From positions 1-64,000 of the IMG/VR virus record IMGVR_UViG_3300023179_005186: 64,000 nt of DNA; one strand, given 5' to 3'. The notes below the pieces were generated by a model. That model made no database searches, had not been told where the DNA came from, and saw nothing but the letters and a program-made list of their open reading frames with translations. The position numbers were made by a program, and so were the translations under genes. Positions within the stretch are counted from its first letter, which is position 1, and every line of letters starts with the position of its first letter. This document shows positions 25,501-51,936 of the stretch, piece after piece.

Positions 25501-25960
25501 TAATTAATAAATGTATTGGAGTATTACCTTCATTATCTACTAATGTGATATCACATTTTAGTTTAACAAGATATTGAATAATATCAAAATATCCTTTAAA
25601 CGCAGCATAATGTAAAGCATTTCTATTAAATTGGTCCATTGAATTAACAGAAACATTTTTACCAACTAACTCTTTTATTAATAATAATTTTTGTCCTTCA
25701 GTAAGCGAAGGATTTTGATTATCGATTACTGCATGTATTAATGTTTTACCCTCACTATTTCTAACATTTAATATAATACCAGAATTAATATTTGACATTA
25801 ATTGATCATAATCATTTGATACAAAATCTCCATATAATGAATTTATCATACCAGTATCTTCTTTAAAAACAGGAGGTACATTTCTTGGAAATTTTGGTTG
25901 ATATATATTTGATTTTGGTTTTTGTCTTATATTCGGATTTGTTTCCATAATATAATTCAT
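19538..25960 (-). CDS. giant ankyrin-repeat protein with Ala/Pro/Gly low-complexity inserts
   Basis: N-terminal GKTLIH, NRNALHYAA, GNTPIHL repeats; second ankyrin-like unit GNTILNKLI near residue 1650. Confidence 0.85.
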   Translation of the reverse strand: MNYIMETNPNIRQKPKSNIYQPKFPRNVPPVFKEDTGMINSLYGDFVSNDYDQLMSNINSGIILNVRNSEGKTLIHAVIDNQNPSLTEGQKLLLIKELVGKNVSVNSMDQFNRNALHYAAFKGYFDIIQYLVKLKCDITLVDNEGNTPIHLLINNFVSECKNDELLNQINKEIKVSKKSKEVEDTSSKVALSLLYKINEQVKNSENRNENFFYNCQSLMEEFISLNIFFKREEINKIFKENSESLNKKFTEIDSTNVSEVRNLKLQINQNIEKTKNDILSVYDDFKINSDFTEIDLDNSIIQEDAKEDSNTILSNANTKIEETHKLIDDIKNCLSDGIVNDSVETSLYLLNTVYYLFYLLSSTLRPINEKCVFPQELILDRFFNGRKPWNDCSSDIIFPNAEFKAPVAAVPGVPAVPAVPGVPPDADIIQYNNVHRLDTFNNPPPAAGVAVVAVVINNNSFIQALGDRKFPFPNYYDKRSKVPNPKLIYPGSQTYQVNEVGYSIQNEPTGKLLNKGNILDNSNKIFDSIKTNDFDIPKFYIRHNDYSKLSELARNQERINQLIQAVEAVKTAVAAAAAGAAAAAAAAPAAAAAGAAAAVIRNNVPRPEQIIIDAVNQVVQVANNESRKVGATAASVLTAAQNAAKRIVVDFEFILLKKDFGNLNIDRQNYNITSNTTDMSINKSLLNIILDQLEKLFEYNPPIIFERNLDRLLNNIETYEYFDLYGTVKDITNNVNENKMYSRVELQGVNDNKEIDISNGVLKKGIPLITINRKFKLNKKDSELDNKSYEVKSMYLINSPGKSEGGENQINSKNLASILEQGKYPSNDFNIDFINPNLIKSDITDFISLDTALKTRGQVRFNLENYAPRNAGGNFETPVNFPQILGVDGTGTAAFNAAAVAAGAGAGAPNPQKYSLELLFNYLNLIHPFFNSYYVPRQSLIYKGTETNQGFGLQPPPGGAPAPGAPPAAPVAAFNLINTDIQDLLFERQKELSRLINDTNFGTTDEVSKMNYLLELTVVQILEKNLPDGVLNNTNNIISEQPYNFADKRYKHGHIYTLIELINNNLDIIKESCLIKLSKDTIMKLSLDSFLVYFNQVYQLIINNMNNLELMKRYINQIDINELKNIYGNINTMLDWILQNKEITNGSKELLNKHFMGFWDKAKDKLDKFESIKSNSDSKYLNQYNRFYQLNKNLITKIKELGIEYEKYHSSQYLIQFINSINYEYRRKNENLYIPNTFYNKFSLPNYFPDKYSEFLKKNSIPPYINDYSLTNVLDLFPFYYPYDFNEIYRNNDTIYIKVINNIIGNPANAQVINPVRTNQNLIYLVTNGAKSILADYIFNITNINFQLDNSNIRDLEDYVPGYDKFKIGYDILINNNRNNIYNYYDILFNNNKINIYKYPNIEYQDIFKPKVLDEWLNELYLEPPYLVNFKNNALNIIENALNLYNQKITIISLHNSKQLFQVLTNLFIKIFIKNIDRFSIDESIDEQLSKVIYYFLTDVKLEGEQKKEYDEFLSKIKTNEKVKIAVVSKHIINYINLFISQLILDETNKLVEQYTNTLQLAYSDEYMRKQLLEIGYKTIKRSLDNIIVDNLDTSIMDDASLNLRQTHLLVPTTNTRIFENKCVNKNMIKKFTEIFGKINLRQEDSNGNTILNKLIDQFNIDAITKLTELDPGLKTFKNHRGENSIDYVHYKIKEIKNEYYKNLDSRIQKYSQVLQNEINSNSQKFSGLSLDESEGLVYNLILHSLYLFNEFIWIKTLEFPGSWSLDDKKKLNELLGIIEKEEDLLIKSFDKNKEHDLENYIKEESNFMIIKEEEIKILMKERDDTNNKIKQFDKATENKLISQESINKIKSELESKQETIQSKIDSLLNLKEKIKINLNIAEEIKQEILMKDGSIDYKSYDNLVSKFKNYYYQVLVLLNKSIKNKPVISNSQIHLISINYDSLPKKNSIDVLISYYSNIINNLYAEFEDFDKYEDDIHNTVNQSMLNIIKINVINVIGKELYNLLIKNMINITEGEKNRKKIVQTESDDTLLLITDDIENILKTSIYIKLGVQNPDSINNNIDILKAKLITDLTNIFGLNPQSATETFNEQFNGFIDFYISVAENISYNIYFELIKLLSSMKKISLLLEILKILMDKET

Positions 25961-38920: not shown

Positions 38921-39955
38921 ATGAATGTTCATAGGTATAATGAGAAGACATCCTCAATTGAAAGGATTGATTTTACAATCCTTGGTAATAAGGAAATCAA
39001 AAATATGTCTGTGTTAAATGATAAATCTGGTCCTGGTCCAGGATTAGTTGTACCTGATTTATATGATAATACTGAACCCAAAAAAGGTGGTCTTATTGAT
39101 CAACGAATGGGTGTTACTTCAAATGAACTAGAATGCACAACATGTGGTTTAAGTACAAACTATTGTGTTGGTCATTTTGGTCATATGGAATTAGCAGAAC
39201 CAGTATTTCACATGGGATTTTATGATTATGTCATCTCAATTTTAAGATGTGTATGTATTAAATGTTCTAAAATATTAGTTTATAAAAATGAAAAAGAAAT
39301 TATGGATATTTTAAAAAATAAAACAGGTAAAGGTAGACTTAATGAAATTAAAAATTTAGTTAAAAATGTTACTTATTGTCAAAAAGCTTTTTATGGATGT
39401 GGTGCACCAGTACCTAAAATAAAATCTGATAAAAAAAAAACAAGTGAAGTATATATTGTTGCTGAATATTTATTATCTTCTTCTACTGAAGAAGATCTAG
39501 AAAAAAAACCGATTAAAGAAACATTAACACCAAATTTAGTTTATAATATATTAAAAAATATTTCTGATACAGATTGTATGATAATTGGATTTGATCCAAA
39601 AAAAAATAGACCTGAAGATTTAATTCACACTATTTTTCCGGTACCTCCTGTACAAGTTAGACCTTCTGTTAGAGGTGATTTTGGTTCTTCTACTACACGT
39701 GAAGATCATTTAACTGTGATACTTTCAAATATATTAAAAGCTAACATTAGAATGAATAAAAATAAAGAAAATGTTACAGAAAATTCATTAAAATATATAC
39801 CTGATCATACTACTTTACTTCAATATCATGTAGCTGTTTATTATGATAGTGATTCTCTTAAAATTCCTGAAACTCAAAGAAAGAATATCACTACTAAATC
39901 ATTAAGTACACGTTTAAAAGGTAAAGAAGGACGTATTCGAAATAATCTGATGGGT
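38921..39955 (+). CDS. RPB1: RNA polymerase largest subunit, exon 1 (345 codons)
   Basis: Zn sites CTTC..CVGHFGH and CVC.KC; PPVQVRPS; ends RLKGKEGRIRNNLMG at U39955. Confidence 0.95.
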
Positions 39956-41321
39956 AATCTGTTTCTCTAGGAAAGAAACAATAGCTTGCTCACAATAGGC
40001 GACTGCTTATTTGGTTGTTGTATCACCAAATAAGGAAAACAGTATAAATACAATCTAGTAATAGTATATAATCGTCTAGTGGATAAATTAAATTATTTAT
40101 CTGCAACACTTCCAAATTGCGGGAACATCTAATTTTGCATTTGCAAATAACTATTTTATACTTCCAGAATATTGAAAAATATTTTGTAATCAACGGAGAA
40201 ATTCGTTAAAAAATAATATGCTTAAAAATTAAAATATATAAAAAGATATATGAAAAATGAATATTGGTGAAATTTATAAAATTACTAATTTAATAAATAA
40301 TAAAATATATATTGGTAAAACTAAAAAATATTATAAAAATATTGAATTTGGTTATTTAAAACGTTTTATTAATCACAAAGTATCAGCAAATTCAGAATCT
40401 AAAAAAAATGATTGTCCTAGACTATATAATGCTATAAGAAAATATGGTAATAAAAATTTTAAAGTCGAAATGATTCATGAATGTGAATTAAAAATCATTG
40501 ATGAAAAAGAAATTGAATTTATAAAAAAGTACAATTCAACTGACAGAAATATAGGTTATAATATCGCCCTTGGTGGTGGTGGTCGTAGTGTTGTTAATAT
40601 ATCTGAAGAAATTCGTTATAAAATTTCAAAGAAACAAAATACTGAACATCCAATGAATATTAAACCTTATTTAAAAAACAATGTACTTGTTGGTTATACA
40701 GTTCAACGAAGAGAAAATGGTATGGTTTTTAGAAAATATTTTACAAATTCTAAAAATATTCCAGAAATTAATCTTGAACTTGCAAAAAACTGGTTAAATG
40801 ATATAATAGATAACAAAATCGATAATACAAATATTAACAAATATAATAGAGATAGTAATTTACCAAAAAATATATATCAAATTATTGAAAATGATAAATT
40901 AGTTGGTTATAAAGTAAATATAATGATTGATGGAAAAAAATATACAAAATCATTTCAATCAAATACTACACTAATTGAAGAGCTTTTGCAAAAAGCTATT
41001 AAATATAAAGAAAGCATATTAAACAGTTATAATTAAAATAGTGAACTGGGAAACCAGTATTAGACAATCCGCAGCCAAGTTCCTAAGTATATTTTTAATA
41101 TATATGGAAAAGGTTCAGAGACTAGATGGTAGTGGGTACTTGAATTTTTAATTCTTGTGCTTAAGGTATAGTCCGTGTCTTGGTGACAAGACTTCCAACT
41201 TTTAAGGAGTTGGGGTTTAAATGATTTAAAATAGTTATTTAAGCTAGTAGATATCAACCTAGACCTAAAGGTTAAATTAATTTAAAAACTAATTTAGCCC
41301 ATGGTTGAAGATATCGATTCG
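39956..41321 (+). mobile_element. group I intron 1 of RPB1 (1366 nt)
   Basis: 5' exon ends in U, intron ends in G. Core P AAATTGCGGGAA 40114-40125, Q AATCCGCAGC 41066-41075, R GTTCAGAGACTAGA 41113-41126, S AAGGTATAGTCC 41163-41174. Splicing restores LMG|KRTDFSGR. Confidence 0.93.
40257..41036 (+). CDS. intron-encoded GIY-YIG homing endonuclease
   Basis: GEIYKITNLINNKIYIGKT, KRFINH, LYNAIRKYG, E.EFIKKYNS..GYN; AP2-like C-terminal DNA-binding units. Confidence 0.9.
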   Translation: MNIGEIYKITNLINNKIYIGKTKKYYKNIEFGYLKRFINHKVSANSESKKNDCPRLYNAIRKYGNKNFKVEMIHECELKIIDEKEIEFIKKYNSTDRNIGYNIALGGGGRSVVNISEEIRYKISKKQNTEHPMNIKPYLKNNVLVGYTVQRRENGMVFRKYFTNSKNIPEINLELAKNWLNDIIDNKIDNTNINKYNRDSNLPKNIYQIIENDKLVGYKVNIMIDGKKYTKSFQSNTTLIEELLQKAIKYKESILNSYN

Positions 41322-41747
41322 AAGAGAACAGATTTTTCGGGGCGTACAGTAATTACGCCTGATCCAAACTTATCTATTAATGAACTTGGAATGCCAATAA
41401 CAATTGCTATGAATATAACATTTCCAGAAATAGTAACTCCTCATAATAAGGATTATTTGGAAAAATTAGTTAGAAATGGTCGTGAAGTTTATCCAGGAGC
41501 TAATTTTATTATTCCTGCAACTTTAAGTGATTCGGATTCCAAGTCAATTATTGATTTAAGATTTAGAAAAAATAAAATTGAATTAAGATATGGTGACATT
41601 GTAGAAAGACATACAAAAAATAATGATATTGTTTTACTCAATCGTCAACCAACTTTACATAAACAAAGTATGATGGGACATAGAGTTAAGGTTATTAATA
41701 ATCCTAACTATTGTACGTTTAGAATTAATCCTAACGTAACAACTCCT
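41322..41747 (+). CDS. RPB1: RPB1 exon 2 (142 codons)
   Basis: [15 protein letters not shown] ... [14 protein letters not shown] ... [10 protein letters not shown]. Confidence 0.95.
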
Positions 41748-43072
41748 TAATGTCAGGGAGTAAAAGCATGAGAAAAACCTTATGCTAGTTTGCTAACAAT
41801 TTATATTAATTGTTATACAAGCGAAATAGTGATATGCGGGAAAGTCCTAAAGTTTTAGATACTAAGTTGAATAAAGAAATTTGTTTGATGGCTTTGGTGA
41901 AAAATCAAGGGTATAGTAAAAATTCTAAAAATAATTAAAGTATTTTAAAAATTATTTAATATAGATATAATAGCTATGGATGAAAGTCAAGATACTGGAG
42001 TTATATATTGTATTGAAAATATAATCACACATAAAAAATATATTGGTCAAGCAAAATCTTATATATTAAAAAAAGGTAAAATTGTTAAACACGGTTTATC
42101 AGGTAGGTTTAAAACACATTTAAAAAGTGCTTTTTCTGGTAAAAATAGTTGTCCTAAATTATACAATTCAATTGTAAAGTATGGATATAAAAGTTTTTCC
42201 ATATCTTTATTAGAAATTTGTTATTTAGAATTTTTAAATGAAAAAGAAACTTTTTACATAAAAAAATTTAATACTGTAGAAGATGGTTATAATATATTAT
42301 ATAGTAATTCAACAATTCATAAAAACTTTGATAGTAGAAAAAATGTTATTGAAAAAATATCAAATACTATGAAAGATAAATGGTCTAATGATGAACAATA
42401 TATAAATAAAACTACTAAAAATAATCTTAAAGCAGTTATTGAAAGAACCAAAAGAGGAACTAGAATTATAAACAAAGAATTACCAAATAATATATATAAA
42501 ACAAAAAATGGTTTTGATATAAGAATAATGAGAAATGGTGTATATAAAATTACATCAGTTGAAAGTAAAATTTTAACTCATGAAGAACTTATTTTAAAAG
42601 CAATTGAGAAAAGAGACAAAATATTTGAACAAATTAAAAATAATGATGTGATTAATTTTCAAAAAAAATATGACCACAATGGTAATGATTTACCAATTGG
42701 TATTCATCTTAAAAAAGCAAGAAATCAAGATGCATATGGAGTAAAAATTATTATTGATGGTAAAATTTATGAAAAATGTGTATCTGATAAAAAACTTTCA
42801 ATGGATGAAAAATTAATAAAAGCTAAAATATTATTAAATGAATTAAAAATACTTTATAAAATGGAAAATCCGCAGGTTCAAGTCTAAATTCGTTATGATA
42901 GAATATGACAAGGACCTCAGAGACTACGTTGCTATTGGTCAATAATGATAGTTTAATCAACTGGAATTGGCTTAAGGTATAGTCCACTCCCACAGGAAAC
43001 TGTGTATACAAGTAGAATTGTATAAGATTGTGATAACAAGAGGAAATGCTTGTTTGAATCTGGTATTTAAGG
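41748..43072 (+). mobile_element. group I intron 2 of RPB1 (1325 nt)
   Basis: P1: exon ACUCCU pairs with GGGAGU (41756-41761) with a U-G wobble at the splice site. P TGCGGGAA 41835, Q AATCCGCAGG 42867, R CTCAGAGACTAC 42916, S AAGGTATAGTCC 42974; terminal G43072. Confidence 0.93.
41976..42887 (+). CDS. intron-encoded GIY-YIG homing endonuclease
   Basis: GVIYCIENIITHKKYIGQA, GRFKTH, LYNSIVKYG, E.FYIKKFNT..GYN; repeated LP.NIY/LPIGIH AP2-like units. Confidence 0.9.
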   Translation: MDESQDTGVIYCIENIITHKKYIGQAKSYILKKGKIVKHGLSGRFKTHLKSAFSGKNSCPKLYNSIVKYGYKSFSISLLEICYLEFLNEKETFYIKKFNTVEDGYNILYSNSTIHKNFDSRKNVIEKISNTMKDKWSNDEQYINKTTKNNLKAVIERTKRGTRIINKELPNNIYKTKNGFDIRIMRNGVYKITSVESKILTHEELILKAIEKRDKIFEQIKNNDVINFQKKYDHNGNDLPIGIHLKKARNQDAYGVKIIIDGKIYEKCVSDKKLSMDEKLIKAKILLNELKILYKMENPQVQV

Positions 43073-43096
43073 TACAACGCAGATTTTGACGGTGAT
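43073..43096 (+). CDS. RPB1: RPB1 exon 3: 24-nt micro-exon encoding YNADFDGD (catalytic Mg2+-binding motif)
   Basis: TAC AAC GCA GAT TTT GAC GGT GAT between omega-G43072 and intron 3; joins TTP|YNADFDGD|EMN in frame. Confidence 0.95.
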
Positions 43097-43598
43097 AGAT
43101 CATTTTGTCACCAACAGCAAGCTGCCAATTAAGTTACTATTCATACTTAATTGGGTAAACAGTGTAAGAATAGTCTAGATATAACTTGCTAGTCTTGTTT
43201 TAAATAAGGCAAGATTACCAATTTGTTCGGGAACCCCTTAAAGCACTACATACTAAACATAATTTGAAAAAATTATGTGGTTTTGCGCAATGGCAAAAAT
43301 TTTTCATAGCAGAATATAATAAACTTTTAAATATACTTAAAAAAAGCTATGAAATAAGTAAAAATTGTAGTGATATTCCTAAAGGATAATAGGAAACCCG
43401 CAGCCGGTCATCTAAGTTCGTTTGATAGAATATGATGATGGTTCAGAGACTTGATGGTAGTCGGTCGGTAATGAAGGTCTAATCAACCTGAACTGGCTTA
43501 AGATAAAGTCCAATTGTCTTCCGAAAGGAAGAATGAAAGATATTTTAAAAATATAAACCTAAGTCAATAAAATGATATGGTTTATGGATATCTTCATG
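43097..43598 (+). mobile_element. group I intron 3 of RPB1 (502 nt, no ORF)
   Basis: P1: exon GGUGAU pairs with GUCACC (43107-43112) with a U-G wobble. P10: UCAUUUU (43100-43106) pairs with exon 4 GAAAUGA. P 43226, Q AACCCGCAGC 43395, R GTTCAGAGACTTGA 43441, S AAGATAAAGTCC 43500; terminal G43598. Confidence 0.93.
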
Positions 43599-46500
43599 GA
43601 AATGAACATTTTTGCACCTCAGAGTATTGAAACCCAATATGAATTAGAGGAAATTGCAGATTTAAAATTACAAATAATTACACCTCAATCTTCTTCACCA
43701 ATTATAGCGATGAAGCAAGATCAATTATTAGGTGCATATAATTTAACTTCTGAATATTATAAATTAGATTGGAGAACTACTATGAATTTATTAGCGTCCA
43801 CTCAAATGGAATCACTTGATAATGTTCCTAAAAACAAAGATTATGCTGGAAAAGAAATTTTCTCTTATTTAATTCCTAAAAAAATTAATCTTATGAAGGG
43901 TGATCCTACTAAACCAACTATTTTAGTTAAAAATGGTATTATGGAATCAGGTATTTTAGGGGATGATTCGCTAGGTGTAAAAAAATCACCTAGTTTAGTA
44001 CAATTAGTCTGGGATGAATATGGTGTTGAGAAAACAAAAACTTTTTTGGATAATACTACCAAATTAGCAAATAACTTTAATTTATTTCACGGTATGACTG
44101 TTGGTATTAAAGATCTTTATATCAGTAATGAACTTGATAATAAAATGCAACAGACTTTTGATACTAAAAAATTAGAAATTCAACATGAAATTACTGAAAT
44201 TGAAAATAATCCAGATATGATGGATGGTGATCTTTTTGAAATGTCCGTTAATCAAAAATTATCAGTTATTCGTGATGATGTATCCAAAGTTATTATGGCT
44301 AGTATGACTAAAGAAAATAATTTTAGGATTATGATTGAATCTGGATCAAAAGGTAAACCAATTAATATCACTCAAATGGCTGGATTAGTTGGTCAACAAG
44401 ATTATCATGGTGGACGCATATTGAAAAACTTTAATAATAGATCTTTACCTTATTTTTTTCAAAATGATGATCGTGCCGAATCAAGAGGTTTTATTGAAAG
44501 ACCTTTTATGCATGGATTAAATATCTCAGAATTTATTTTTCATCATCTATCTTCTAGAGAAGGTCTAATTGATCAAACTGTGCGATCTGTTACTCCTGAT
44601 ACTAGAATTACTATTATTGAAAATTCGATTCCCAAAACTGTTGAAATAGGTCCTTGGATTGATTCGATAATTAAAATAAAATCTGATCAAGTCGAACACG
44701 ATGTTAACGAATTTGAATTAGTTAATGTAACTGGTATTACAATCCCAACTGTTGACTCTGTTGGAAAAGTTACTTGGGCTAATGTAACTGCAGTTACTAG
44801 ACATGCTAAAGGAAATCAATTGTTTGAAATCGTAACTAGAGGTGGTAGAAAAGTTAAAGTTCCTGAATCTAAATCACTTTTGATCTGGAATAATGAGACT
44901 AAACAATTTGAAGATAAACTTACTCCAGATGTTAAAGTCGGAGATTTCGTTCCTGTTACAATGAATTTACCTCAACCTCCTATTATAAATAATCATATTG
45001 ATATGACAGAATTTAAAATACAGGAAGAGAAAGATTCGTTATTACCAGATAAATTTATATTAAATAAATTAAATGGTCAATTCATTGGATTATTCTTAGC
45101 TGATGGTAATGTTAATTATGAAAATGGCTATATACATTTAAATAATTGTAATGAAAATGTGTTAAACTTTATTAAAAAGTACTTTGACGGTCTAGATATT
45201 AGTTATAATGAGAATAAAAAAATATTAGAAATAGAAACTATTACTGATATTAGTGGTTATTCTAGAATTTTATGCAAGTTCCTATATGCTACTTGTGGTA
45301 ATGATGCTTATGAAAAACATGTTCCTGATTTTGCATTCAATGCTCCTGAAGAGTTTGTTATTGGACTAATTGATGGATATATATCTAGAAATGCTTGTGT
45401 AACCGAATCCTCTATTACTACCTTATCTTGTTCATTAAAGTTAATTGATGGAATTAATATGTTATTAAATAGAATTGGTGTATTTTCTAAAATTAGTACT
45501 CATAAATATGATAACAAAAACAATGATATTAAAGCCAATTATAATATTATTGAAATTGGTATTAGAGCACAATGGGTGCGCAAATTTAAATCTAAAATGA
45601 TATCTCTAATTAACTTTAATAAAAATGATAAATTTTATAAAATAGAAAGTTCAACAATTACTCATACAAATTACATAGAACAAGAAGATGTTGTACTTGA
45701 TCAAATTGTTGAAATTAATCAACTTAATCCTGAAAATTATCCTAAACTATATGATTTAACTGTTCCTGGAACTTTTAACTTTATAATAAGTAATGGAATG
45801 GGTTGTCGAGATACTGCAGATAGTGGTTATATTCAAAGAAAGCTAATCAAATCAACTGAAGATTTCATGGTAAATTATGATGGTACAGTTAGAAATGCTG
45901 TAGGTAGAATTCAACAATTCGTGTATGGTGAATCAGGTGCAGACACAGTTAAACAATATGAATATAAATTTCAAATAATGGAACTTTCAAATTCAGAAAT
46001 TGCTAACAAATTTAAATTTACTAAAGAAGAACTTACTAAAGTCAAAAATTTTACTGAATCTGATAATAATAAATTTTATCAAAATATATTAAAATGTCGT
46101 GATCATTTAAGGTTTACTCAAATGAAATCAACTGTTGAATATAAAATTCTTAATATAAAATACATGTTACCAGTTAATATATATCGTATTATAAATAATA
46201 TTAGAAATGATCCTGATAAAAAAGGTAATGTAAATTATGATTGTGAATATATTCTAAACTTAATTGATAGAATTTTAGAAAGTAAAAATACCAAGTTATA
46301 TTGCATGACTGAAGAAGAAATGAAAGATGAATCTTCTATTAAATATAAAGATGATCAAATGGCAAAGACAGCCTTAAAATATGCTTTATTAGAATCACTT
46401 GCTCCAAAAAAATGTATTTATACTTATAAATTTACAAAGGAACAGTTAGAAGATGTAGCTACTGATATTATTTCAAGTTTTAACTCAAGTATTGTTGAAC

Positions 46501-48464
46501 CAGGCGAAATGGTTGGAATTATTGCTGCACAAAGTTTAGGTGAACCAGTTACACAGCTTATGTTAAATAGCCTTGACTGGACTGAAGAAATACTTATTCA
46601 TGATTCAAAATCAAATCAGGATACAGTTTTACCTATTGGTCAATTTATTGACAACTTAATTGATAATAATAAAGGTCAGGTAACTAATCCTATTGATAAC
46701 TTGGAAGCTGAAATGAAAAATATTTATTATCTAGATACAAATGATTGTAATTATCAAATCAAGTCAGTTGATGAAAATGGTAAAGTATCATGGAAAAAAA
46801 TAGAAGCAGTTACAAAACATTTACCTATTAATAAAGATGGTACTAATACTTTAATTAGGGTAACAACTAGAACTGGTAAATCTGTTATTGCTACTAAAGG
46901 AAAATCATTCTTAACACAAAAAAATAATAAGATTGTTCCTATTAGGGGTGATGAATTAGAAATTAAAACTTGTTTACCTATAATGAATAAATGTTTAAAT
47001 TTAGATGGTATTACCTATGAATATTATAAACATAATATTCATAATATACAAGAATTTGGTGATGTGTTTATGGATGAAATTATATCAATTGAAGATATTC
47101 AACCAACAAACACTTATGTTTATGATTTTACTGTTCAAGATACTAAAACATTTATTATTTCAAATGGTTTATGTTGTATGGATAGCTTTCACTCGTCAGG
47201 AGTAGGTGGTAAAGGTAGTAAAAGTATTGGTGTTGATCGAATCAAAGAAGTTTTTAGTTTATCAAAAAATCCAAAAGAACCAATAATGATGATTTATTTG
47301 AATAAAGAACATAGAGAAAAGAAAGATTTTGCGAATAAAATAGCTTCTCACATTAAATTTACCACCATTAAAGACTTGAGGACTAAAATTGAAATATATT
47401 ATGATCCTAAACCTTATAGTAAAAATGGATTTATGGAAAAAGATAACATTAATACTATATTCTATACTTATCAACAATCTAAACAATGTTGTGCTAATAC
47501 TATTGATGGATTACCTTGGTTAATGAGAATTGAATTTGATAGAGAAAAATTACTTTCTAAAGAAGTTTCTCTTTTAGATATTAAATCTCAATTCTGTTTT
47601 AGTTGGGAAAAACGTTATCAAGATATTAAAAGTGTTAAACGAGAAAAACGTGTTATTTTAGAAAAAATTTCACAATTAGCTGTATTATCTAACACTGATA
47701 ATGATGATATACCAACAGTGCATTTAAGATTCGATATGACTAACTTTAATTCATCTACATTAATTGACTTTATGGATATGTTTGTTGATGACTTTAAACT
47801 TAAAGGTATGTCGAATATTGATGATATTAGAGGTGGTGGTAAAGCAATTGAAGAACGTTATATTAGTTTTGATAATCCTGAAAATTCTTTTGAAAAGAAA
47901 AATGAATATGTCGTTTATACTAATGGAATTAACATGTATGATATTCGAAATATTATAGGTATTGATTTAACTAGAACTTATTGTAATGATATTATTACCA
48001 CTTATGAAATATTTGGTATTGAAGCTGCACGTAATCTTATTATACGTGAAATTATTAATGTATTATCTTCCAATGGTTCTGGTACTAACTATCAACACAT
48101 TGGTATGTTTGGTGATTTAATGACTAATCAGGGAACTTTAACATCAATAGATAGACATGGTTTAAATAAATTAGATACTGATCCATTCTCTAGAGCATCA
48201 TTTGAAAAAACTGTTGATCAATTAATTACTGCTGCAGTATTTAATGAAGTTGATCATATGAAATCAGTTTCTTCTAGAATTATGGCTGGTCTTTGTATTA
48301 AAGGTGGTACTGGTTTATGTGATCTAATTTTAGATAAAGATTTGTTAGAAAATTCAGAATACACTATAGATATTGGACAATTATACAATAAAACTTATCA
48401 AGATATTACTGTTCAACAAAAACAACAAGAAATAGATATTGAAGTATTTATTCCTGATTTATAA
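43599..48464 (+). CDS. RPB1: RPB1 exon 4, containing two inteins
   Basis: EMNIFAPQ, SGSKG, REGLID, GYIQRK, GIIAAQSLGEP, FGIEAAR, ASFE. Removing all introns and inteins gives about 1502 aa. Confidence 0.96.
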   Translation, partial: EMNIFAPQSIETQYELEEIADLKLQIITPQSSSPIIAMKQDQLLGAYNLTSEYYKLDWRTTMNLLASTQMESLDNVPKNKDYAGKEIFSYLIPKKINLMKGDPTKPTILVKNGIMESGILGDDSLGVKKSPSLVQLVWDEYGVEKTKTFLDNTTKLANNFNLFHGMTVGIKDLYISNELDNKMQQTFDTKKLEIQHEITEIENNPDMMDGDLFEMSVNQKLSVIRDDVSKVIMASMTKENNFRIMIESGSKGKPINITQMAGLVGQQDYHGGRILKNFNNRSLPYFFQNDDRAESRGFIERPFMHGLNISEFIFHHLSSREGLIDQTVRSVTPDTRITIIENSIPKTVEIGPWIDSIIKIKSDQVEHDVNEFELVNVTGITIPTVDSVGKVTWANVTAVTRHAKGNQLFEIVTRGGRKVKVPESKSLLIWNNETKQFEDKLTPDVKVGDFVPVTMNLPQPPIINNHIDMTEFKIQEEKDSLLPDKFILNKLNGQFIGLFLADGNVNYENGYIHLNNCNENVLNFIKKYFDGLDISYNENKKILEIETITDISGYSRILCKFLYATCGNDAYEKHVPDFAFNAPEEFVIGLIDGYISRNACVTESSITTLSCSLKLIDGINMLLNRIGVFSKISTHKYDNKNNDIKANYNIIEIGIRAQWVRKFKSKMISLINFNKNDKFYKIESSTITHTNYIEQEDVVLDQIVEINQLNPENYPKLYDLTVPGTFNFIISNGMGCRDTADSGYIQRKLIKSTEDFMVNYDGTVRNAVGRIQQFVYGESGADTVKQYEYKFQIMELSNSEIANKFKFTKEELTKVKNFTESDNNKFYQNILKCRDHLRFTQMKSTVEYKILNIKYMLPVNIYRIINNIRNDPDKKGNVNYDCEYILNLIDRILESKNTKLYCMTEEEMKDESSIKYKDDQMAKTALKYALLESLAPKKCIYTYKFTKEQLEDVATDIISSFNSSIVEPGEMVGIIAAQSLGEPVTQLMLNSLDWTEEILIHDSKSNQDTVLPIGQFIDNLIDNNKGQVTNPIDNLEAEMKNIYYLDTNDCNYQIKSVDENGKVSWKKIEAVTKHLPINKDGTNTLIRVTTRTGKSVIATKGKSFLTQKNNKIVPIRGDELEIKTCLPIMNKCLNLDGITYEYYKHNIHNIQEFGDVFMDEIISIEDIQPTNTYVYDFTVQDTKTFIISNGLCCMDSFHSSGVGGKGSKSIGVDRIKEVFSLSKNPKEPIMMIYLNKEHREKKDFANKIASHIKFTTIKDLRTKIEIYYDPKPYSKNGFMEKDNINTIFYTYQQSKQCCANTIDGLPWLMRIEFDREKLLSKEVSLLDIKSQFCFSWEKRYQDIKSVKREKRVILEKISQLAVLSNTDNDDIPTVHLRFDMTNFNSSTLIDFMDMFVDDFKLKGMSNIDDIRGGGKAIEERYISFDNPENSFEKKNEYVVYTNGINMYDIRNIIGIDLTRTYCNDIITTYEIFGIEAARNLIIREIINVLSSNGSGTNYQHIGMFGDLMTNQGTLTSIDRHGLNKLDTDPFSRASFEKTVDQLITAAVFNEVDHMKSVSSRIMAGLCIKGGTGLCDLILDKDLLENSEYTIDIGQLYNKTYQDITVQQKQQEIDIEVFIPDL
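44586..45812 (+). mobile_element. RPB1 intein A (409 aa; Ser1...Asp C-terminus, +1 Thr) with LAGLIDADG-type domain
   Basis: LIDQTVR|SVTPDT ... FIGLFLADG ... IGLIDGY ... YDLTVPGTFNFIISNGMGCRD|TADSGY; removal restores the bridge-helix sequence. Confidence 0.9.
46569..47183 (+). mobile_element. RPB1 intein B (205-aa mini-intein; Ser1...Asp C-terminus, +1 Ser)
   Basis: GEPVTQLMLN|SLDWTE ... YVYDFTVQDTKTFIISNGLCCMD|SFHSSG; removal restores the trigger-loop sequence. Confidence 0.9.
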
Positions 48465-49379: not shown

Positions 49380-50675
49380 ATGAGTCGTAAAATTGTATTT
49401 GAACCTATTGCCTTTGAAGATGAAAGGCAAAAAAAATCAACTCAATTTAGTACTACAGTTGGATTAATGAAGGATGGAAAAAAAGTATATCCTGATGAAA
49501 CTACCGGCTTTATGTACCAAATGTATTCTGGATTTGCATCATCAATGTTTAATCCTCCTGAAAATCGTGATTGGATTAAACTTGATATTAATGAAAATGA
49601 AAATACTTATGTTGAATTTATGAATACTATCAATGAGTATGATAATGAATTTGAAAAACAAAAAGATAATATTTTTGGTAAATTTTCTAAATTTTACAAT
49701 ATTGTTCGATCTGTTAAAGAGCCTAAAGAAGATGATGAACTTGAAATGGAAGCTAATGCTGATAAACCTGTTAAACCTAAATATAAATCAATTAAATTAA
49801 AACTAAAAATGGGTTGGAATTATTATTATGATAATGTTTTACTCGATCAAATTAATGCATCAATTATCCGTAAATCTGTTAACGAAACTCTTGCAAAAAA
49901 TAATGATAAGAAACTACTAGAAAACCTTACTTTTACACTTAAAATTACTGATGAAAATGGAAAAAAAATAGATAAGAAAATTAAAATGAGTGAAATCGAA
50001 TCTCGTAAGGAAATTATTACTAAAGTTTATTATCGTCAAAAAGATGATTCTGTTGACCTTAAAAAAGTTACTGATTGTACTGATAATGATGAATTAGAAG
50101 AAATTTATGGTAAACCTGAAGAAGTATTTGTAAAAACACCTGAAGATTTTGATAGATATCATAAATATAGATGTTTTGTTCGTTATCTTTATTCACCTTC
50201 TAAAGTTTGGGCTTCAAAATCTAAAGGTGATGATGGTAAACGTAGAACAAGTCTTCAATTTGTATGTCATCAAATTGATATTATACACATTAAAGAAAAA
50301 AAAAATAATACATCTGCTGTTCGTTCAATTTATTCTGGATATGGATTTGGCTCAAGACCTGATACTGTTTTTGATGTAACTGAGAAAGGTATTGACAAAT
50401 TAGAAAAAGAAACATCTATTCCAAAAAATAAAATTAAAGATAAAGATAAAGATGAAGATGAAGATGAAGATGAAGATGAAGATGAAGATGAAGATGAAGA
50501 TGAAGACGAAGATGAAGAAGATAAAGAAGATAAAGAAGTCATTAAATCTAATAAACATACATTAAAAGTTGAATCTGATTCTGATTCTGATGAATCAAAA
50601 CCTCCTAAAAAAAATTCTAAAAATAAAATTGTTGAACAAGTAAAAACTACAAAAAAGAATACTAAACGTAAGTAA
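49380..50675 (+). CDS. putative ssDNA-binding protein (DUF2738/OB-fold-like) with acidic tail
   Basis: alternating beta-strand pattern with aromatics (KVW...SLQF.C.QI.I) followed by (DE)n tract, as in phage-type SSBs; assignment by resemblance. Confidence 0.5.
   Translation: MSRKIVFEPIAFEDERQKKSTQFSTTVGLMKDGKKVYPDETTGFMYQMYSGFASSMFNPPENRDWIKLDINENENTYVEFMNTINEYDNEFEKQKDNIFGKFSKFYNIVRSVKEPKEDDELEMEANADKPVKPKYKSIKLKLKMGWNYYYDNVLLDQINASIIRKSVNETLAKNNDKKLLENLTFTLKITDENGKKIDKKIKMSEIESRKEIITKVYYRQKDDSVDLKKVTDCTDNDELEEIYGKPEEVFVKTPEDFDRYHKYRCFVRYLYSPSKVWASKSKGDDGKRRTSLQFVCHQIDIIHIKEKKNNTSAVRSIYSGYGFGSRPDTVFDVTEKGIDKLEKETSIPKNKIKDKDKDEDEDEDEDEDEDEDEDEDEDEEDKEDKEVIKSNKHTLKVESDSDSDESKPPKKNSKNKIVEQVKTTKKNTKRK
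50451..50520 (+). repeat. (GATGAA)n hexamer tract encoding (DE)n
   Basis: direct reading of the sequence. Confidence 0.9.
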
Positions 50676-50718
50676 ATATTAATTTATTAAAATATATTTA
50701 TCTAATTAAAATTTTATT

Positions 50719-50747
50719 TTAACTTATTTTTTATTAAAATAAGTTAA
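50719..50747 (+). terminator. perfect 12-bp hairpin after the 49380-50675 gene
   Basis: TTAACTTATTTT / loop TTATT / AAAATAAGTTAA; fits the Mimivirus hairpin rule for polyadenylation. Confidence 0.7.
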
Positions 50748-50751
50748 GACT

Positions 50752-51936
50752 TTGTATTTTATTTATATATATATAATGGACGACGAAAAAAAAAATATTA
50801 TTAGTCCTTTTGATATTAATGATAACAAATTATTAGATGCAATTGAAGAAATGACAATTTCTGAAAACAAAAATGCTGATTATATGGGTTTAACTATTTA
50901 TTTATCAAGACTTGAATATAATAAATTACCATTTTTATTTAGACTAGATAATATTAAAGTTGTTAAAAATGATGCCATTAATAGTAAATTTGTTGTTAAA
51001 ATTGATAATAAAATTATTAAAATTTTAAATAAATTTGATATTAAATGTCAAGAATTATTAAAAAATAGTATTATAATTAATAATGATGATGAAGATGAAC
51101 CTTTTTGTATTAGTTATATGGATAGTTATGAAGATGGTAAATTATTTGATATCATGTATAACTATAAAACTAATATTCTATGTAATGATGTTGAAATGGC
51201 TCCTGCTGATGTGCAAATTGGAGATAAAATTAGCGCTATTTTAATGATCGATTCTATAATATTTATTGTTAATACTAGAGAAGCAAAAACTAAATATAAT
51301 ATCGTTTTAATAGATCTGTATACAAAAAAACCAAGAGAATCTACAAAAAAAAATATGATTGAAGAATTTATTTATGAATTAATTAAAAATAAAATTTCAC
51401 AAGATGAAAAATTTATTCAAGAAAAAAATGAAGAAAATAAAGAAAATGAAGAAAATGAAGAAAATGAAGAAAATGAAGTAAATGAAGTAAATGAAGTAAA
51501 TTTTAATAATAAAATAGTAAAAGATAATTCTGTACAATTGAAATCAAAAACTGTTAAAAAAATAGATGAAAAGAAACCAGTTAAATCAGTTGAAAATAAT
51601 AAAAGAAAAAAACCTGTAAAACAAATTGAAACAGTTGTAACAATTGAACCAGTTGAAACAGTTGAATCAATTGTAAATAAAAAAACAAAAAGTAAAAAAA
51701 CTGTAAAATCTGCTGAAACTGTTAAACCAGTTATAAATAAAAAAACAAAAGTCAAAGATAAAAAAAATGTTTTAACAGTTAAAACTATTGAGACGGTTGA
51801 ACCAGTTGAACCGGTTGAATCAATTGTACCTGTTGAATCAGTTGTACCTGTTGAAAATAAAAAAACAAAAGGAAAAAAGACTAAAAAATCTGTTGAGACA
51901 ATTGAACAGGTTAAAAATAATAAAACAAAAAATTAA
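50752..51936 (+). CDS. hypothetical protein with ENE/VNE and VE(P/T/S)V low-complexity repeats
   Basis: 394-aa ORF (real start probably MDDEKK); globular N-half, repetitive Lys/Glu/Val C-half. Confidence 0.75.
   Translation: MYFIYIYIMDDEKKNIISPFDINDNKLLDAIEEMTISENKNADYMGLTIYLSRLEYNKLPFLFRLDNIKVVKNDAINSKFVVKIDNKIIKILNKFDIKCQELLKNSIIINNDDEDEPFCISYMDSYEDGKLFDIMYNYKTNILCNDVEMAPADVQIGDKISAILMIDSIIFIVNTREAKTKYNIVLIDLYTKKPRESTKKNMIEEFIYELIKNKISQDEKFIQEKNEENKENEENEENEENEVNEVNEVNFNNKIVKDNSVQLKSKTVKKIDEKKPVKSVENNKRKKPVKQIETVVTIEPVETVESIVNKKTKSKKTVKSAETVKPVINKKTKVKDKKNVLTVKTIETVEPVEPVESIVPVESVVPVENKKTKGKKTKKSVETIEQVKNNKTKN

What the first reader, a model, noticed from the sequence alone, without database searches (positions are those of the whole stretch)
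44586..47183. Two RPB1 inteins with a shared non-canonical chemistry: Ser1, block-B Lys, no penultimate His, C-terminal Asp
Seen: intein A begins SVTPDT, has block B KVPESKSL and ends NGMGCRD|T. Intein B begins SLDWTE, has block B IATKGKSF and ends NGLCCMD|S. Both replace the block-B His with Lys, lack the penultimate His, end in Asp instead of Asn and carry Cys at -2. Block-F Asp (YDLTV/YDFTV) is kept. Established: canonical splicing uses TxxH and a terminal His-Asn; Asp-terminated or His-less inteins are rare single exceptions. RPB1 is essential and both sites are in the active-centre bridge helix and trigger loop, so these inteins presumably splice. Inference: a distinct giant-virus intein lineage with an alternative mechanism (Asp cyclisation, Lys or Cys-assisted), possibly conditional or redox-sensitive. 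The Top2 intein in the same window is canonical, which argues against a sequencing artefact.
Basis: partly seen in the sequence, partly recalled or inferred. Interest (0 to 1): 0.85.

Follow-up and report, generated by a model that had tools for sequence, protein, structure and literature searches.

The report
Asp-ended, Lys-for-His inteins in RPB1
Two self-splicing protein inserts in a giant virus's RNA polymerase belong to a very large intein lineage, not described in the papers I could search, that has replaced two near-universal catalytic residues (block-B His to Lys, terminal Asn to Asp) and so points to a natural alternative active site for protein splicing.

Summary
Window 44586-45812 (409 aa) and 46569-47183 (205 aa) are HINT-fold inteins. 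They sit exactly between yeast-Rpb1 K830|T831 (bridge helix) and N1082|T1083 (trigger loop). Both have Ser1, Lys where block B normally has His, no penultimate His, a terminal Asp (GAT) and Thr/Ser at +1.

This is not a peculiarity of this genome. In 267 RPB1 relatives, 132/132 bridge-helix inteins and 176/176 trigger-loop inteins end in Asp. About 90% carry Lys at B:10. A third intein site lies three residues upstream and is shared with archaeal RpoA''. It is canonical (His, His-Asn) in 95 of 97 cases, and the two exceptions carry Lys and Asp together.

With the trait columns removed, a tree unites all Lys/Asp inteins. The bridge-helix family is nested inside the trigger-loop family, so this looks like one lineage that moved between sites.

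All three families keep the [R/K]-His 'NX' motif of Ser1 oxyester inteins and the block-F Asp. The best reading is active class-1 oxyester inteins that resolve the branch by Asp cyclisation.

The Cys at -2 is not conserved, so a Cys or redox mechanism is not supported. Splicing itself is untested. This is a new variant of a known kind.

The parts
43599..48464 (+). Last RPB1 exon (Rpb1 domains 3-7), which hosts both inteins
   Evidence: Pfam RNA_pol_Rpb1_3/4/5/6/7. The exon start follows from the group I intron end at 43598.
44586..45812 (+). Intein A (409 aa), bridge-helix site, between residues equivalent to yeast Rpb1 K830|T831
   Evidence: Family of 132 members: all have Ser1, a terminal Asp and Thr+1.
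44586..44588 (+). Intein A Ser1 (TCT), the N-terminal nucleophile
   Evidence: Ser in 132/132.
44802..44804 (+). Intein A His73 in the motif T-R-H, the proposed NX-motif histidine
   Evidence: His in 132/132, preceded by Arg or Lys. The motif is described in PMC10189870.
44856..44879 (+). Intein A block B, KVPESKSL. Lys96 (44871-44873, AAA) occupies B:10 and Pro occupies B:7.
45090..45380 (+). LAGLIDADG homing-endonuclease remnant. Motif 1 is LFLADGN. Motif 2 reads GLIDGYISRNAC where relatives have ...SGDG. There is also a 75-aa deletion upstream.
   Evidence: Pfam LAGLIDADG_3 and the alignment to 484-aa relatives.
45753..45755 (+). Intein A block F Asp (F:4) in YDLTV
   Evidence: Asp in 132/132.
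45810..45815 (+). Intein A terminal Asp (GAT) followed by the C-extein Thr+1 (ACT)
   Evidence: Asp in 132/132 and Thr in 132/132. An independent DNA contig covers 45594-46092 with 0 differences.
46569..47183 (+). Intein B (205-aa mini-intein), trigger-loop site, between residues equivalent to yeast Rpb1 N1082|T1083
   Evidence: AlphaFold2 model pLDDT 87.3; best fold match is the Mvu TFIIB mini-intein 5o9i.
46569..46571 (+). Intein B Ser1 (AGC)
   Evidence: Ser in 173/176.
46818..46820 (+). Intein B His84 in T-K-H, the proposed NX-motif histidine
   Evidence: Aligns with the His of SRH in the TFIIB inteins. Conserved in family B.
46887..46910 (+). Intein B block B, IATKGKSF. Thr is at B:7 and Lys112 (46902-46904, AAA) is at B:10.
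47124..47126 (+). Intein B block F Asp (F:4) in YDFTV
   Evidence: Asp in 176/176.
47181..47186 (+). Intein B terminal Asp (GAT) followed by the C-extein Ser+1 (AGC)
   Evidence: Asp in 176/176. In 64/64 IMG/VR relatives the residue is Asp, encoded GAT 46 times and GAC 18 times.

Best explanation
Both inserts are functional class-1 inteins of the Ser1/Thr(Ser)+1 'oxyester' subgroup. They belong to one lineage, here called Lys/Asp, that carries a remodelled active site.

Proposed steps, all inferred from sequence and precedent:
1. N-to-O acyl shift at Ser1. The invariant [R/K]-His NX-motif histidine (His73 in A, His84 in B) and the block-F Asp provide the help. The residue at B:10 is usually Lys. 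It supplies a positive or hydrogen-bonding group to the scissile amide in place of the lost block-B His, but it is not strictly required.
2. Trans-esterification onto Thr+1 or Ser+1.
3. The branch is resolved when the terminal Asp cyclises to a succinic anhydride, instead of Asn cyclising to a succinimide. This happens without a penultimate His.
4. O-to-N shift, giving an intact bridge helix and trigger loop.

Evolution: the lineage arose once from a canonical Ser1 intein at the neighbouring trigger-loop site (TQM|TLN), a site shared with archaeal RpoA''. It then colonised TLN|TFH, and from within that family it colonised the bridge helix. In this window both copies have lost homing activity and persist only because they still splice.
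For: HINT fold and intein blocks are present.

The junctions map to adjacent Rpb1 residues.

Nucleophiles and key residues are conserved:
- Family A: Ser1, Asp(G:7) and Thr+1 in 132/132.
- Family B: Asp in 176/176, Ser1 in 173/176, +1 Thr 154 and Ser 22.
- Block-F Asp in 308/308 and NX His essentially invariant.

The +1 nucleophile is constrained only where an intein is present. Empty site-b alleles read Ala 14, Ser 13, Thr 4.

Asp is kept with synonymous variation (GAT 46, GAC 18) across genomes of 21-57% GC. In this ~25% GC genome GAT is one G-to-A transition from Asn. This indicates selection for Asp itself.

The same proteins carry canonical His/His-Asn inteins three residues away (95 of 97). 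The two site-c exceptions have Lys and Asp together.

With the trait columns removed, the tree puts A+B on one side of a starred branch (97/81) and nests A inside B (99/96). Forcing all Lys/Asp inteins into one clade raises lnL by 4.0, p-AU 0.59.

Precedents from papers:
- Inteins with C-terminal Asp, Gln or Glu are taken to use the same pathway with cyclisation of that residue. Loss of the penultimate His occurs in about 5% of functional inteins (PMC4031507).
- In the Ser1 PolB16 intein the NX His is essential and the block-B His is dispensable (PMC10189870).
- Tko CDC21-1 splices without the B:10 His, using a Lys.

Homing-endonuclease decay or loss in this window shows these copies persist without homing. 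No second near-identical RPB1 was found on the 315-kb contig.
Against: No biochemical or proteomic evidence of splicing was available here.

The RNA-library contigs cover Ser1 and the Lys codons but not the Asp codons. That library may also contain DNA.

B:10 is Gln, Leu, Arg, Glu, Asn or His in about 10% of members, so a catalytic role for Lys is uncertain.

The Lys/Asp covariation rests on one, or at most two, evolutionary events. It is not statistical proof of functional coupling.

The equivalence of the T-[RK]-H motif to the published NX motif is inferred from its description and from alignment to the TFIIB inteins. It was not checked by superposition.

The AlphaFold model's coordinates could not be inspected, so the geometry around Lys, Asp and His is unknown.

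The outgroup used for the root (the Top2 intein) sits on a very long branch.
Confidence: 0.7

Rival explanations
1. One reading: a distinct mechanism in which the Cys at -2 (G:5) or a disulfide assists or gates Asp cyclisation, making splicing redox-sensitive.
For: Both window inteins have Cys at G:5, and B also has one at G:4 (NGMGCRD, NGLCCMD). Disulfide-switched inteins are known (a reference cited in PMC4031507).
Against: G:5 is Val in 87/132 of family A with Cys in only 13. In family B it is Leu, Met or Val in 102/176 with Cys in only 23. The catalytic nucleophiles are Ser and Thr, not Cys.
Confidence: 0.05
2. The inteins are dead relics that stay in the mature polymerase as tolerated insertions.
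For: Three hallmark catalytic residues are missing. The homing endonuclease is decayed. Bacterial RNA polymerases tolerate large trigger-loop insertions (my own knowledge).
Against: Ser1, the +1 Ser/Thr, F:4 Asp, the NX His and the terminal Asp are invariant over hundreds of sequences that are otherwise 35-65% identical, with synonymous codon change. The +1 residue relaxes to Ala only in empty alleles. Site a lies in the middle of the bridge helix.
Confidence: 0.05
3. The elements only cleave and do not ligate, so RPB1 is matured into non-covalently assembled fragments. This would echo the natural A'/A'' split of the archaeal enzyme.
For: Asp-X bonds can cleave through an anhydride without any branch intermediate (general chemistry, my own knowledge). 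The archaeal subunit is naturally split (searches show separate A' and A'' ORFs).
Against: Cleavage alone needs no +1 nucleophile, yet +1 is Ser or Thr in 308/308 occupied sites and is Ala in 45% of empty site-b alleles. The cut points would fall inside the bridge helix and the first trigger-loop helix.
Confidence: 0.07
4. Lys(B:10) and Asp(G:7) form a functionally coupled pair, for example a salt bridge that holds back Asp cyclisation until the branch forms, or that makes splicing pH-dependent. On this view the lineage is a genuinely separate mechanistic class and not a tolerant variant of class 1.
For: His/Asn versus Lys/Asp covary perfectly between the clades and in the two site-c exceptions. 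Further lineage-specific changes exist: Gly versus Glu 13 residues before the NX His, and Thr versus Ser two residues before it. Asn never reappears despite AT mutation pressure.
Against: About 10% of members have lost the Lys without losing the Asp. Only one or two independent transitions exist, so shared ancestry explains the covariation. No structure is available to show proximity.
Confidence: 0.13

Closest known systems
Canonical site-c inteins of giant-virus RPB1 and Woesearchaeota RpoA'' (TQM|S...HN|TLN)
   Same: Same host protein, and the insertion point is only three residues upstream of intein B. Same subfamily architecture: Ser1, W...[ST]-[RK]-H NX motif, G-R, T-x-x-[HK]-S-F-L, YDLTV block F, Thr+1. 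These are the sister group in the tree.
   Different: They keep the block-B His (77/77) and His-Asn (95/97). The window's inteins have Lys, a variable residue, and Asp at those positions.
Asp-terminated inteins such as Chy RIR1 (Amitai, Dassa & Pietrokovski 2004, J Biol Chem 279:3121; cited in PMC4031507 and PMC1635734)
   Same: C-terminal Asp in place of Asn. Reviews state that such inteins splice by the class-1 route with Asp cyclisation.
   Different: Those are isolated cases in another host protein. The paper itself was not readable here, so I could not check their other residues. In the window's lineage Asp is fixed in more than 300 sequences and comes together with loss of both the block-B His and the penultimate His.
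Tko CDC21-1 intein and its orthologues (Tori et al. 2012; PDB 6rpq and 6rpp are the Pho and Pab orthologues)
   Same: A functional intein without the block-B His, in which a Lys is proposed to activate the N-terminal junction. Its orthologues are structural neighbours of the intein B model.
   Different: Its compensating Lys58 lies outside the conserved blocks. It undergoes an N-to-S acyl shift, implying a Cys nucleophile where the window's inteins have Ser1. Its C-terminal residues were not checked here. In the window's inteins the Lys sits at B:10 itself.
PolB16 OarG and other Ser1/Ser(Thr)+1 'cysteine-less' inteins with the NX motif (Pasch et al. 2023, PMC10189870)
   Same: Ser1 and Thr/Ser+1 oxyester chemistry. 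A [R/K]-His motif upstream of block B. The block-B His is functionally dispensable in PolB16.
   Different: PolB16 and all 58 Ser1 inteins examined in that paper still carry the block-B His and end in Asn. Here the His is actually gone and the terminus is Asp.
Mvu and Mja TFIIB mini-inteins (PDB 5o9i, 5o9j)
   Same: Best sequence match (E 3e-10) and best fold match (TM 0.87 on the target) to intein B. The Ser1/SRH/TxxH architecture aligns residue by residue.
   Different: Archaeal, in a different host protein, and with His at B:10 in the aligned block. The alignment stops short of the C-terminus, so their terminal residues were not compared.
Bodo saltans virus polr2a/polr2b inteins and group I introns (Deeg et al. 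2018, PMC5871332)
   Same: The same overall picture: a klosneuvirus-type RPB1 broken by group I introns that carry endonuclease ORFs and by inteins that appear to lack an active endonuclease.
   Different: That paper does not discuss the inteins' catalytic residues. I could not retrieve the BsV sequence, so I do not know whether it belongs to the Lys/Asp lineage.

Membership tests
Intein (HINT-domain protein-splicing element) | HINT fold and intein splicing blocks | tested here: met
   Pfam PF14890 E 5e-15 (A) and 2e-12 (B). AlphaFold2 pLDDT 87. Foldseek top hits are all inteins; 5o9i has TM 0.87 on the target.
Intein (HINT-domain protein-splicing element) | In-frame insertion at a conserved host site, with host sequence contiguous once the insert is removed | tested here: met
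   The flanks align to yeast Rpb1 residues 830|831 and 1082|1083. Intein-less alleles exist.
Intein (HINT-domain protein-splicing element) | Demonstrated excision with ligation of the exteins | not testable with these tools
   Needs expression or proteomics. Only indirect evidence from conservation is available.
Class 1 inteins, canonical residue set | Ser/Cys/Thr at position 1 and at +1 | tested here: met
   A has Ser1 and Thr+1; B has Ser1 and Ser+1. This holds family-wide.
Class 1 inteins, canonical residue set | Block B TxxH, with His at B:10 | tested here: not met
   A reads P-E-S-K and B reads T-K-G-K. The same column is His in 77/77 of the canonical sister family.
Class 1 inteins, canonical residue set | Block F Asp (F:4) | tested here: met
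   YDLTV and YDFTV. Asp is invariant in all three families.
Class 1 inteins, canonical residue set | Penultimate His (G:6) and terminal Asn (G:7) | tested here: not met
   The ends are R-D and M-D. G:7 is Asp in 308/308 and G:6 is His in only 3/308.
Ser1 oxyester inteins with NX motif (Pasch et al. 2023) | Ser1 with Ser/Thr+1, and a His preceded by Arg or Lys upstream of block B | tested here: met
   T-R-H (A) and T-K-H (B). His is present in 132/132 of A and about 173/176 of B. It aligns with SRH of the TFIIB inteins. Structural equivalence is inferred.
Ser1 oxyester inteins with NX motif (Pasch et al. 2023) | Block-B (N3:10) His 'absolutely conserved' in the 58 Ser1 inteins examined | tested here: not met
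   Lys in both window inteins.
Class 3 inteins (WCT triad) | No N-terminal nucleophile, with Trp B:12, Cys F:4 and Thr G:5 | tested here: not met
   Ser1 is present and F:4 is Asp. The class definition is from PMC4031507.
Class 2 inteins (Mja KlbA type) | Ala1, with the +1 Cys attacking the N-terminal junction directly | tested here: not met
   Ser1 and Thr/Ser+1.
Asp-terminated inteins (Chy RIR1 type) | C-terminal Asp that cyclises in step 3 | tested here: inconclusive
   Asp is present and invariant. Cyclisation itself cannot be tested with these tools.

The most novel reading that the evidence does not exclude
The Lys/Asp inteins are a fourth mechanistic class. Lys at B:10 and the terminal Asp act as a coupled pair, for example an ion pair that gates anhydride formation or makes splicing depend on pH. 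Maturation of the viral RNA polymerase's bridge helix and trigger loop would then be conditional on the state of the infected cell or the virus factory.
Probability: 0.13. Interest if true: 0.85.

Novelty: new variant of a known kind. Interest (0 to 1): 0.62.

Why it matters
The block-B histidine is called the most conserved intein residue, and the terminal Asn defines the 'asparagine lyase' step (PMC4031507). Here a natural lineage of hundreds of diverged inteins has replaced both and dropped the penultimate His, inside the catalytic core of an essential enzyme of abundant aquatic giant viruses.

That provides a ready-made comparative series for asking what the minimal intein active site is and why Asp is preferred over Asn in this context: canonical sister inteins three residues away, Lys/Asp inteins at three sites, and natural Lys-to-Gln/Leu/Arg variants.

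The 205-aa mini-intein, whose catalytic nucleophiles are Ser and not Cys, is also a candidate tool for protein ligation under oxidising conditions.

It documents an intein lineage hopping between neighbouring active-centre sites of one protein.

Tried and rejected
- A wide Rfam scan of 39800-43700 found nothing. Narrower scans then found three group I introns, so the first result was a filter artefact.
- tblastn of intein B against the phage and plasmid collections gave no match, so no extra outgroups came from there.
A family-C alignment worked but returned only archaeal site-c alleles. These fall inside family C and do not root the tree.
- The cluster look-up of the NCBI-sourced relatives returned no virus names, so I could not link the lineage to a cultured isolate.
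- The Amitai 2004 paper is not held.
- Laying reads showed no RNA-level removal or editing, but the RNA contigs do not reach either Asp codon and may derive from DNA, so transcription is not shown.
- The structure tool returns no coordinates, so Lys-Asp-His distances could not be measured.
- I considered shifted junctions, for example an intein ending at ...IISN. I rejected this because the next residue (Gly) is not a nucleophile and the flanks already map to adjacent Rpb1 residues.
- I considered that Lys/Asp arose independently in A and B. I rejected this because A is nested in B and a single Lys/Asp clade is not rejected.
Full report
WHAT IS THERE

The window is the first 64 kb of a 315,722-bp IMG/VR giant-virus contig from lake water. 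It has about 17-28% GC in 2-kb windows. ORF 43572-48464(+) carries Rpb1 domains 3-7 plus two Pfam Intein_splicing matches and a LAGLIDADG_3 match.

Intein A is 44586-45812 (409 aa) and intein B is 46569-47183 (205 aa).

The extein flanks align to adjacent residues of yeast Rpb1 (PDB 1i3q chain A). For intein A the N-flank ends at 830 and the C-flank starts at 831. For intein B the N-flank ends at 1082 and the C-flank starts at 1083. From my own knowledge these positions lie in the bridge helix and two residues before the trigger-loop His1085.

Other evidence fixes the same junctions. Intein-less relatives read ...TQLMLN|SFHSSG.... A metatranscriptome contig of a relative reads REGLIDGAIK and then joins the window exactly at 45813.

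Contigs from independent DNA runs of 2013 and 2019 cover both inteins, including both Asp codons, without a single difference. The unusual residues are therefore not assembly errors.

The Top2 gene at 12271-17085(-) has a canonical Cys...His-Asn|Cys intein.

THE RESIDUE ASSIGNMENTS

In the phmmer alignment to the solved Mvu and Mja TFIIB mini-inteins (E 3e-10), B's A-T-K-G-K-S pairs with V-T-G-S-H-S. The second Lys therefore occupies the block-B His position.

An AlphaFold2 model of B with five flanking residues on each side has pLDDT 87.3 and pTM 0.85. Its best structural match is the Mvu TFIIB mini-intein, with TM 0.87 on the target, followed only by other inteins.

Both Asp codons are GAT and both Lys codons are AAA.

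THE FAMILY

Searching with A returned 893 RPB1-length proteins. Searching with B against 1.84 billion cluster representatives returned 896, of which 491 had E below 1e-10. IMG/VR holds 425 loci.

I parsed the 267 retrieved proteins by extein motifs.

- Site a (bridge helix), n=132. Ser1, terminal Asp and Thr+1 are present in 132/132.
- Site b (TLN|[ST]FH), n=176. Asp is present in 176/176 and Ser1 in 173. The +1 residue is Thr in 154 and Ser in 22.
- Site c, three residues upstream of b (TQ[ML]|TLN), about 97 occupied. Of these, 95 end His-Asn|Thr, and 77/77 aligned members have His at B:10.

Many proteins therefore carry a canonical intein and an Asp-ended intein separated only by Thr-Leu-Asn.

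At B:10, family A has Lys 120, Gln 8, Glu 2, His 1 and Asn 1. Family B has Lys 155, Leu 8, Arg 6, Glu 2, Asn 1 and His 1, and three B rows are gapped or misaligned at that column.

The penultimate residue is variable and is Arg or Lys in just over half of members.

Residues invariant in all three families are Ser1, a Trp, the motif [TS]-[RK]-His about 23-28 residues before B:10, Ser at B:11, the block-F Tyr-Asp, and a Phe.

Only a few columns separate the Lys/Asp inteins from the canonical family:
- B:10: Lys versus His
- G:6: variable versus His
- G:7: Asp versus Asn
- Gly versus Glu, 13 residues before the motif His
- Thr versus Ser, two residues before the motif His

The two site-c exceptions (P0164, P0229) read ATLAKSFL...RD|TLN, so they carry Lys and Asp together.

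ARE THEY ALIVE?

Direct proof is missing. The pattern is what purifying selection on splicing predicts.

- The +1 nucleophile is Ser or Thr in every occupied site. In empty site-b alleles it is Ala 14, Ser 13, Thr 4. In empty site-c alleles it is Met or Val in 46 of 140.
- In 64 distinct IMG/VR site-b inteins from genomes of 21-57% GC, the terminal residue is always Asp, encoded GAT 46 times and GAC 18 times. Lys is encoded AAA 31 times and AAG 23 times.
- In an AT-rich genome, GAT to AAT (Asn) is a single favoured transition, yet Asn is never seen.
- The window's intein A has a 75-aa deletion and a damaged second LAGLIDADG motif. Intein B has no endonuclease at all, whereas relatives are 480-535 aa. 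These copies can no longer home, so they persist only if they do not harm RPB1.
- Only one RPB1 C-terminal locus was found on the contig. That search would miss a divergent copy.

ORIGIN

I built a maximum-likelihood tree of 70 representatives using the N- and C-terminal splicing regions, with the B:10, G:6 and G:7 columns removed.

- A+B fall on one side of a starred branch (97/81).
- A is monophyletic (97/80) and nested within B (99/96 and 95/84).
- The B members closest to A, such as P0024, really do sit at TLN|...|TFH and look like A.
- The two site-c Lys/Asp inteins fall, unresolved, at the base of family C.
- Forcing all Lys/Asp inteins into one clade gives a tree 4.0 log-likelihood units better than the free search, p-AU 0.59.
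- Woesearchaeota RpoA'' genes carry a canonical site-c intein (TQM|S...THN|TLNTFH). One of them (L002) was placed in the tree and nests inside family C.

The simplest history is a canonical Ser1 intein at site c, then a Lys/Asp variant, then a move to site b, then a move to site a. The root rests on a very long Top2 outgroup branch, so it is weak.

MECHANISM

Mills, Johnson and Perler (PMC4031507) state three relevant points. [quoted passage not shown] About 5% of functional inteins lack the penultimate His. Inteins ending in Asp, Gln or Glu are thought to follow the class-1 route by cyclising that residue.

Pasch et al. 2023 (PMC10189870) found that Ser1/Ser(Thr)+1 inteins share an overlooked 'NX' histidine that is always preceded by Arg or Lys. 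It is essential in three tested inteins. In PolB16 the block-B His is dispensable. All 58 Ser1 inteins they examined nevertheless kept that His.

The T-[RK]-His motif here fits the NX description and is invariant. The B:10 position tolerates Gln, Leu and Arg.

My best reading (confidence about 0.7) has four parts. Ser1 is activated mainly through the NX His and block-F Asp. Lys at B:10 is a helpful but replaceable substitute for His. The branch is resolved by Asp cyclising to an anhydride. The product is a normally ligated RPB1. All mechanistic steps are inferred.

A coupled Lys-Asp pair, or conditional pH-dependent splicing, is possible. It rests on one or two evolutionary events and on the fact that Asn never returns. 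I give it about 0.13.

Help from Cys or redox, dead insertions, and cleavage-only maturation are each unlikely, for the reasons given under the rival explanations.

WHAT IS KNOWN, AND NOVELTY

Inteins and group I introns in klosneuvirus RPB1 and RPB2 are published (Deeg et al. 2018, PMC5871332). Neither that paper, nor the survey of eukaryotic and viral inteins (PMC5784728), nor the RNA-polymerase intein paper (PMC1635734), nor two reviews mentions an Asp-ended, His-less RPB1 intein lineage. Seven targeted full-text searches found nothing on it. Subscription journals are not covered, so prior description cannot be excluded.

I file this as a new variant of a known kind. It is a class-1-like oxyester intein lineage in which three 'hallmark' positions are changed together and fixed.

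Noticed in passing
window 39971-43598: The RPB1 gene is split by three group I introns (Rfam RF00028, all just under the 50-bit gathering score). The cores are at 40991-41193 (49.1 bits), 42780-43006 (29.7 bits) and 43173-43533 (44.2 bits). The first two introns hold ORFs (40257-41036 and 41976-42887). The first ORF matches a GIY-YIG Pfam domain weakly, below its cutoff. The second resembles it at its N-terminus by eye but has no Pfam hit.
   Followed up: partly
window 43073-43096: A 24-nt micro-exon encodes only YNADFDGD, the catalytic metal-binding motif of RPB1. It lies between introns 2 and 3. The upstream exon ends in T (43096), intron 3 ends in G (43598), and the next exon starts EMNIFAPQS at 43599.
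   Followed up: partly
window 12271-17085 (-): The topoisomerase II gene carries a canonical VMA-type intein (GSK|CLAPD...FTVTHN|CANIY) with a Hom_end endonuclease domain. The same genome therefore uses standard intein chemistry elsewhere.
   Followed up: yes
relatives P0112, P0121, P0082 and others; L002-L004 (Woesearchaeota RpoA''): A third RPB1 intein site (TQM|TLN) lies three residues upstream of site b. It is empty in this window and occupied in many relatives by a canonical Ser...His-Asn intein. That intein is allelic and homologous (34-41% identity) to an archaeal RpoA'' intein. Some viral RPB1s carry three inteins.
   Followed up: yes
window 45813 (run X19): A metatranscriptome contig from another lake sample carries an intein-less allele of a related RPB1 (REGLIDGAIK directly joined to the C-extein). 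Filled and empty alleles therefore co-occur in freshwater.
   Followed up: no
window 39800-43700: One Rfam call over 3.9 kb reported no match, while 0.5-1.4 kb calls over the same DNA found three group I introns with E values from 3e-5 to 4e-11. A negative from a wide call is not reliable in this AT-rich sequence.
   Followed up: yes
window 19538-25960 (-): A 2140-aa ORF with N-terminal ankyrin repeats and no other Pfam match.
   Followed up: no
window 49380-51936 (+): Two adjacent ORFs have long acidic (DEDEDE...) and Lys/Glu/Asn-rich low-complexity tails. The antisense strand gives a spurious poly-Ser ORF at 50330-50542.
   Followed up: no
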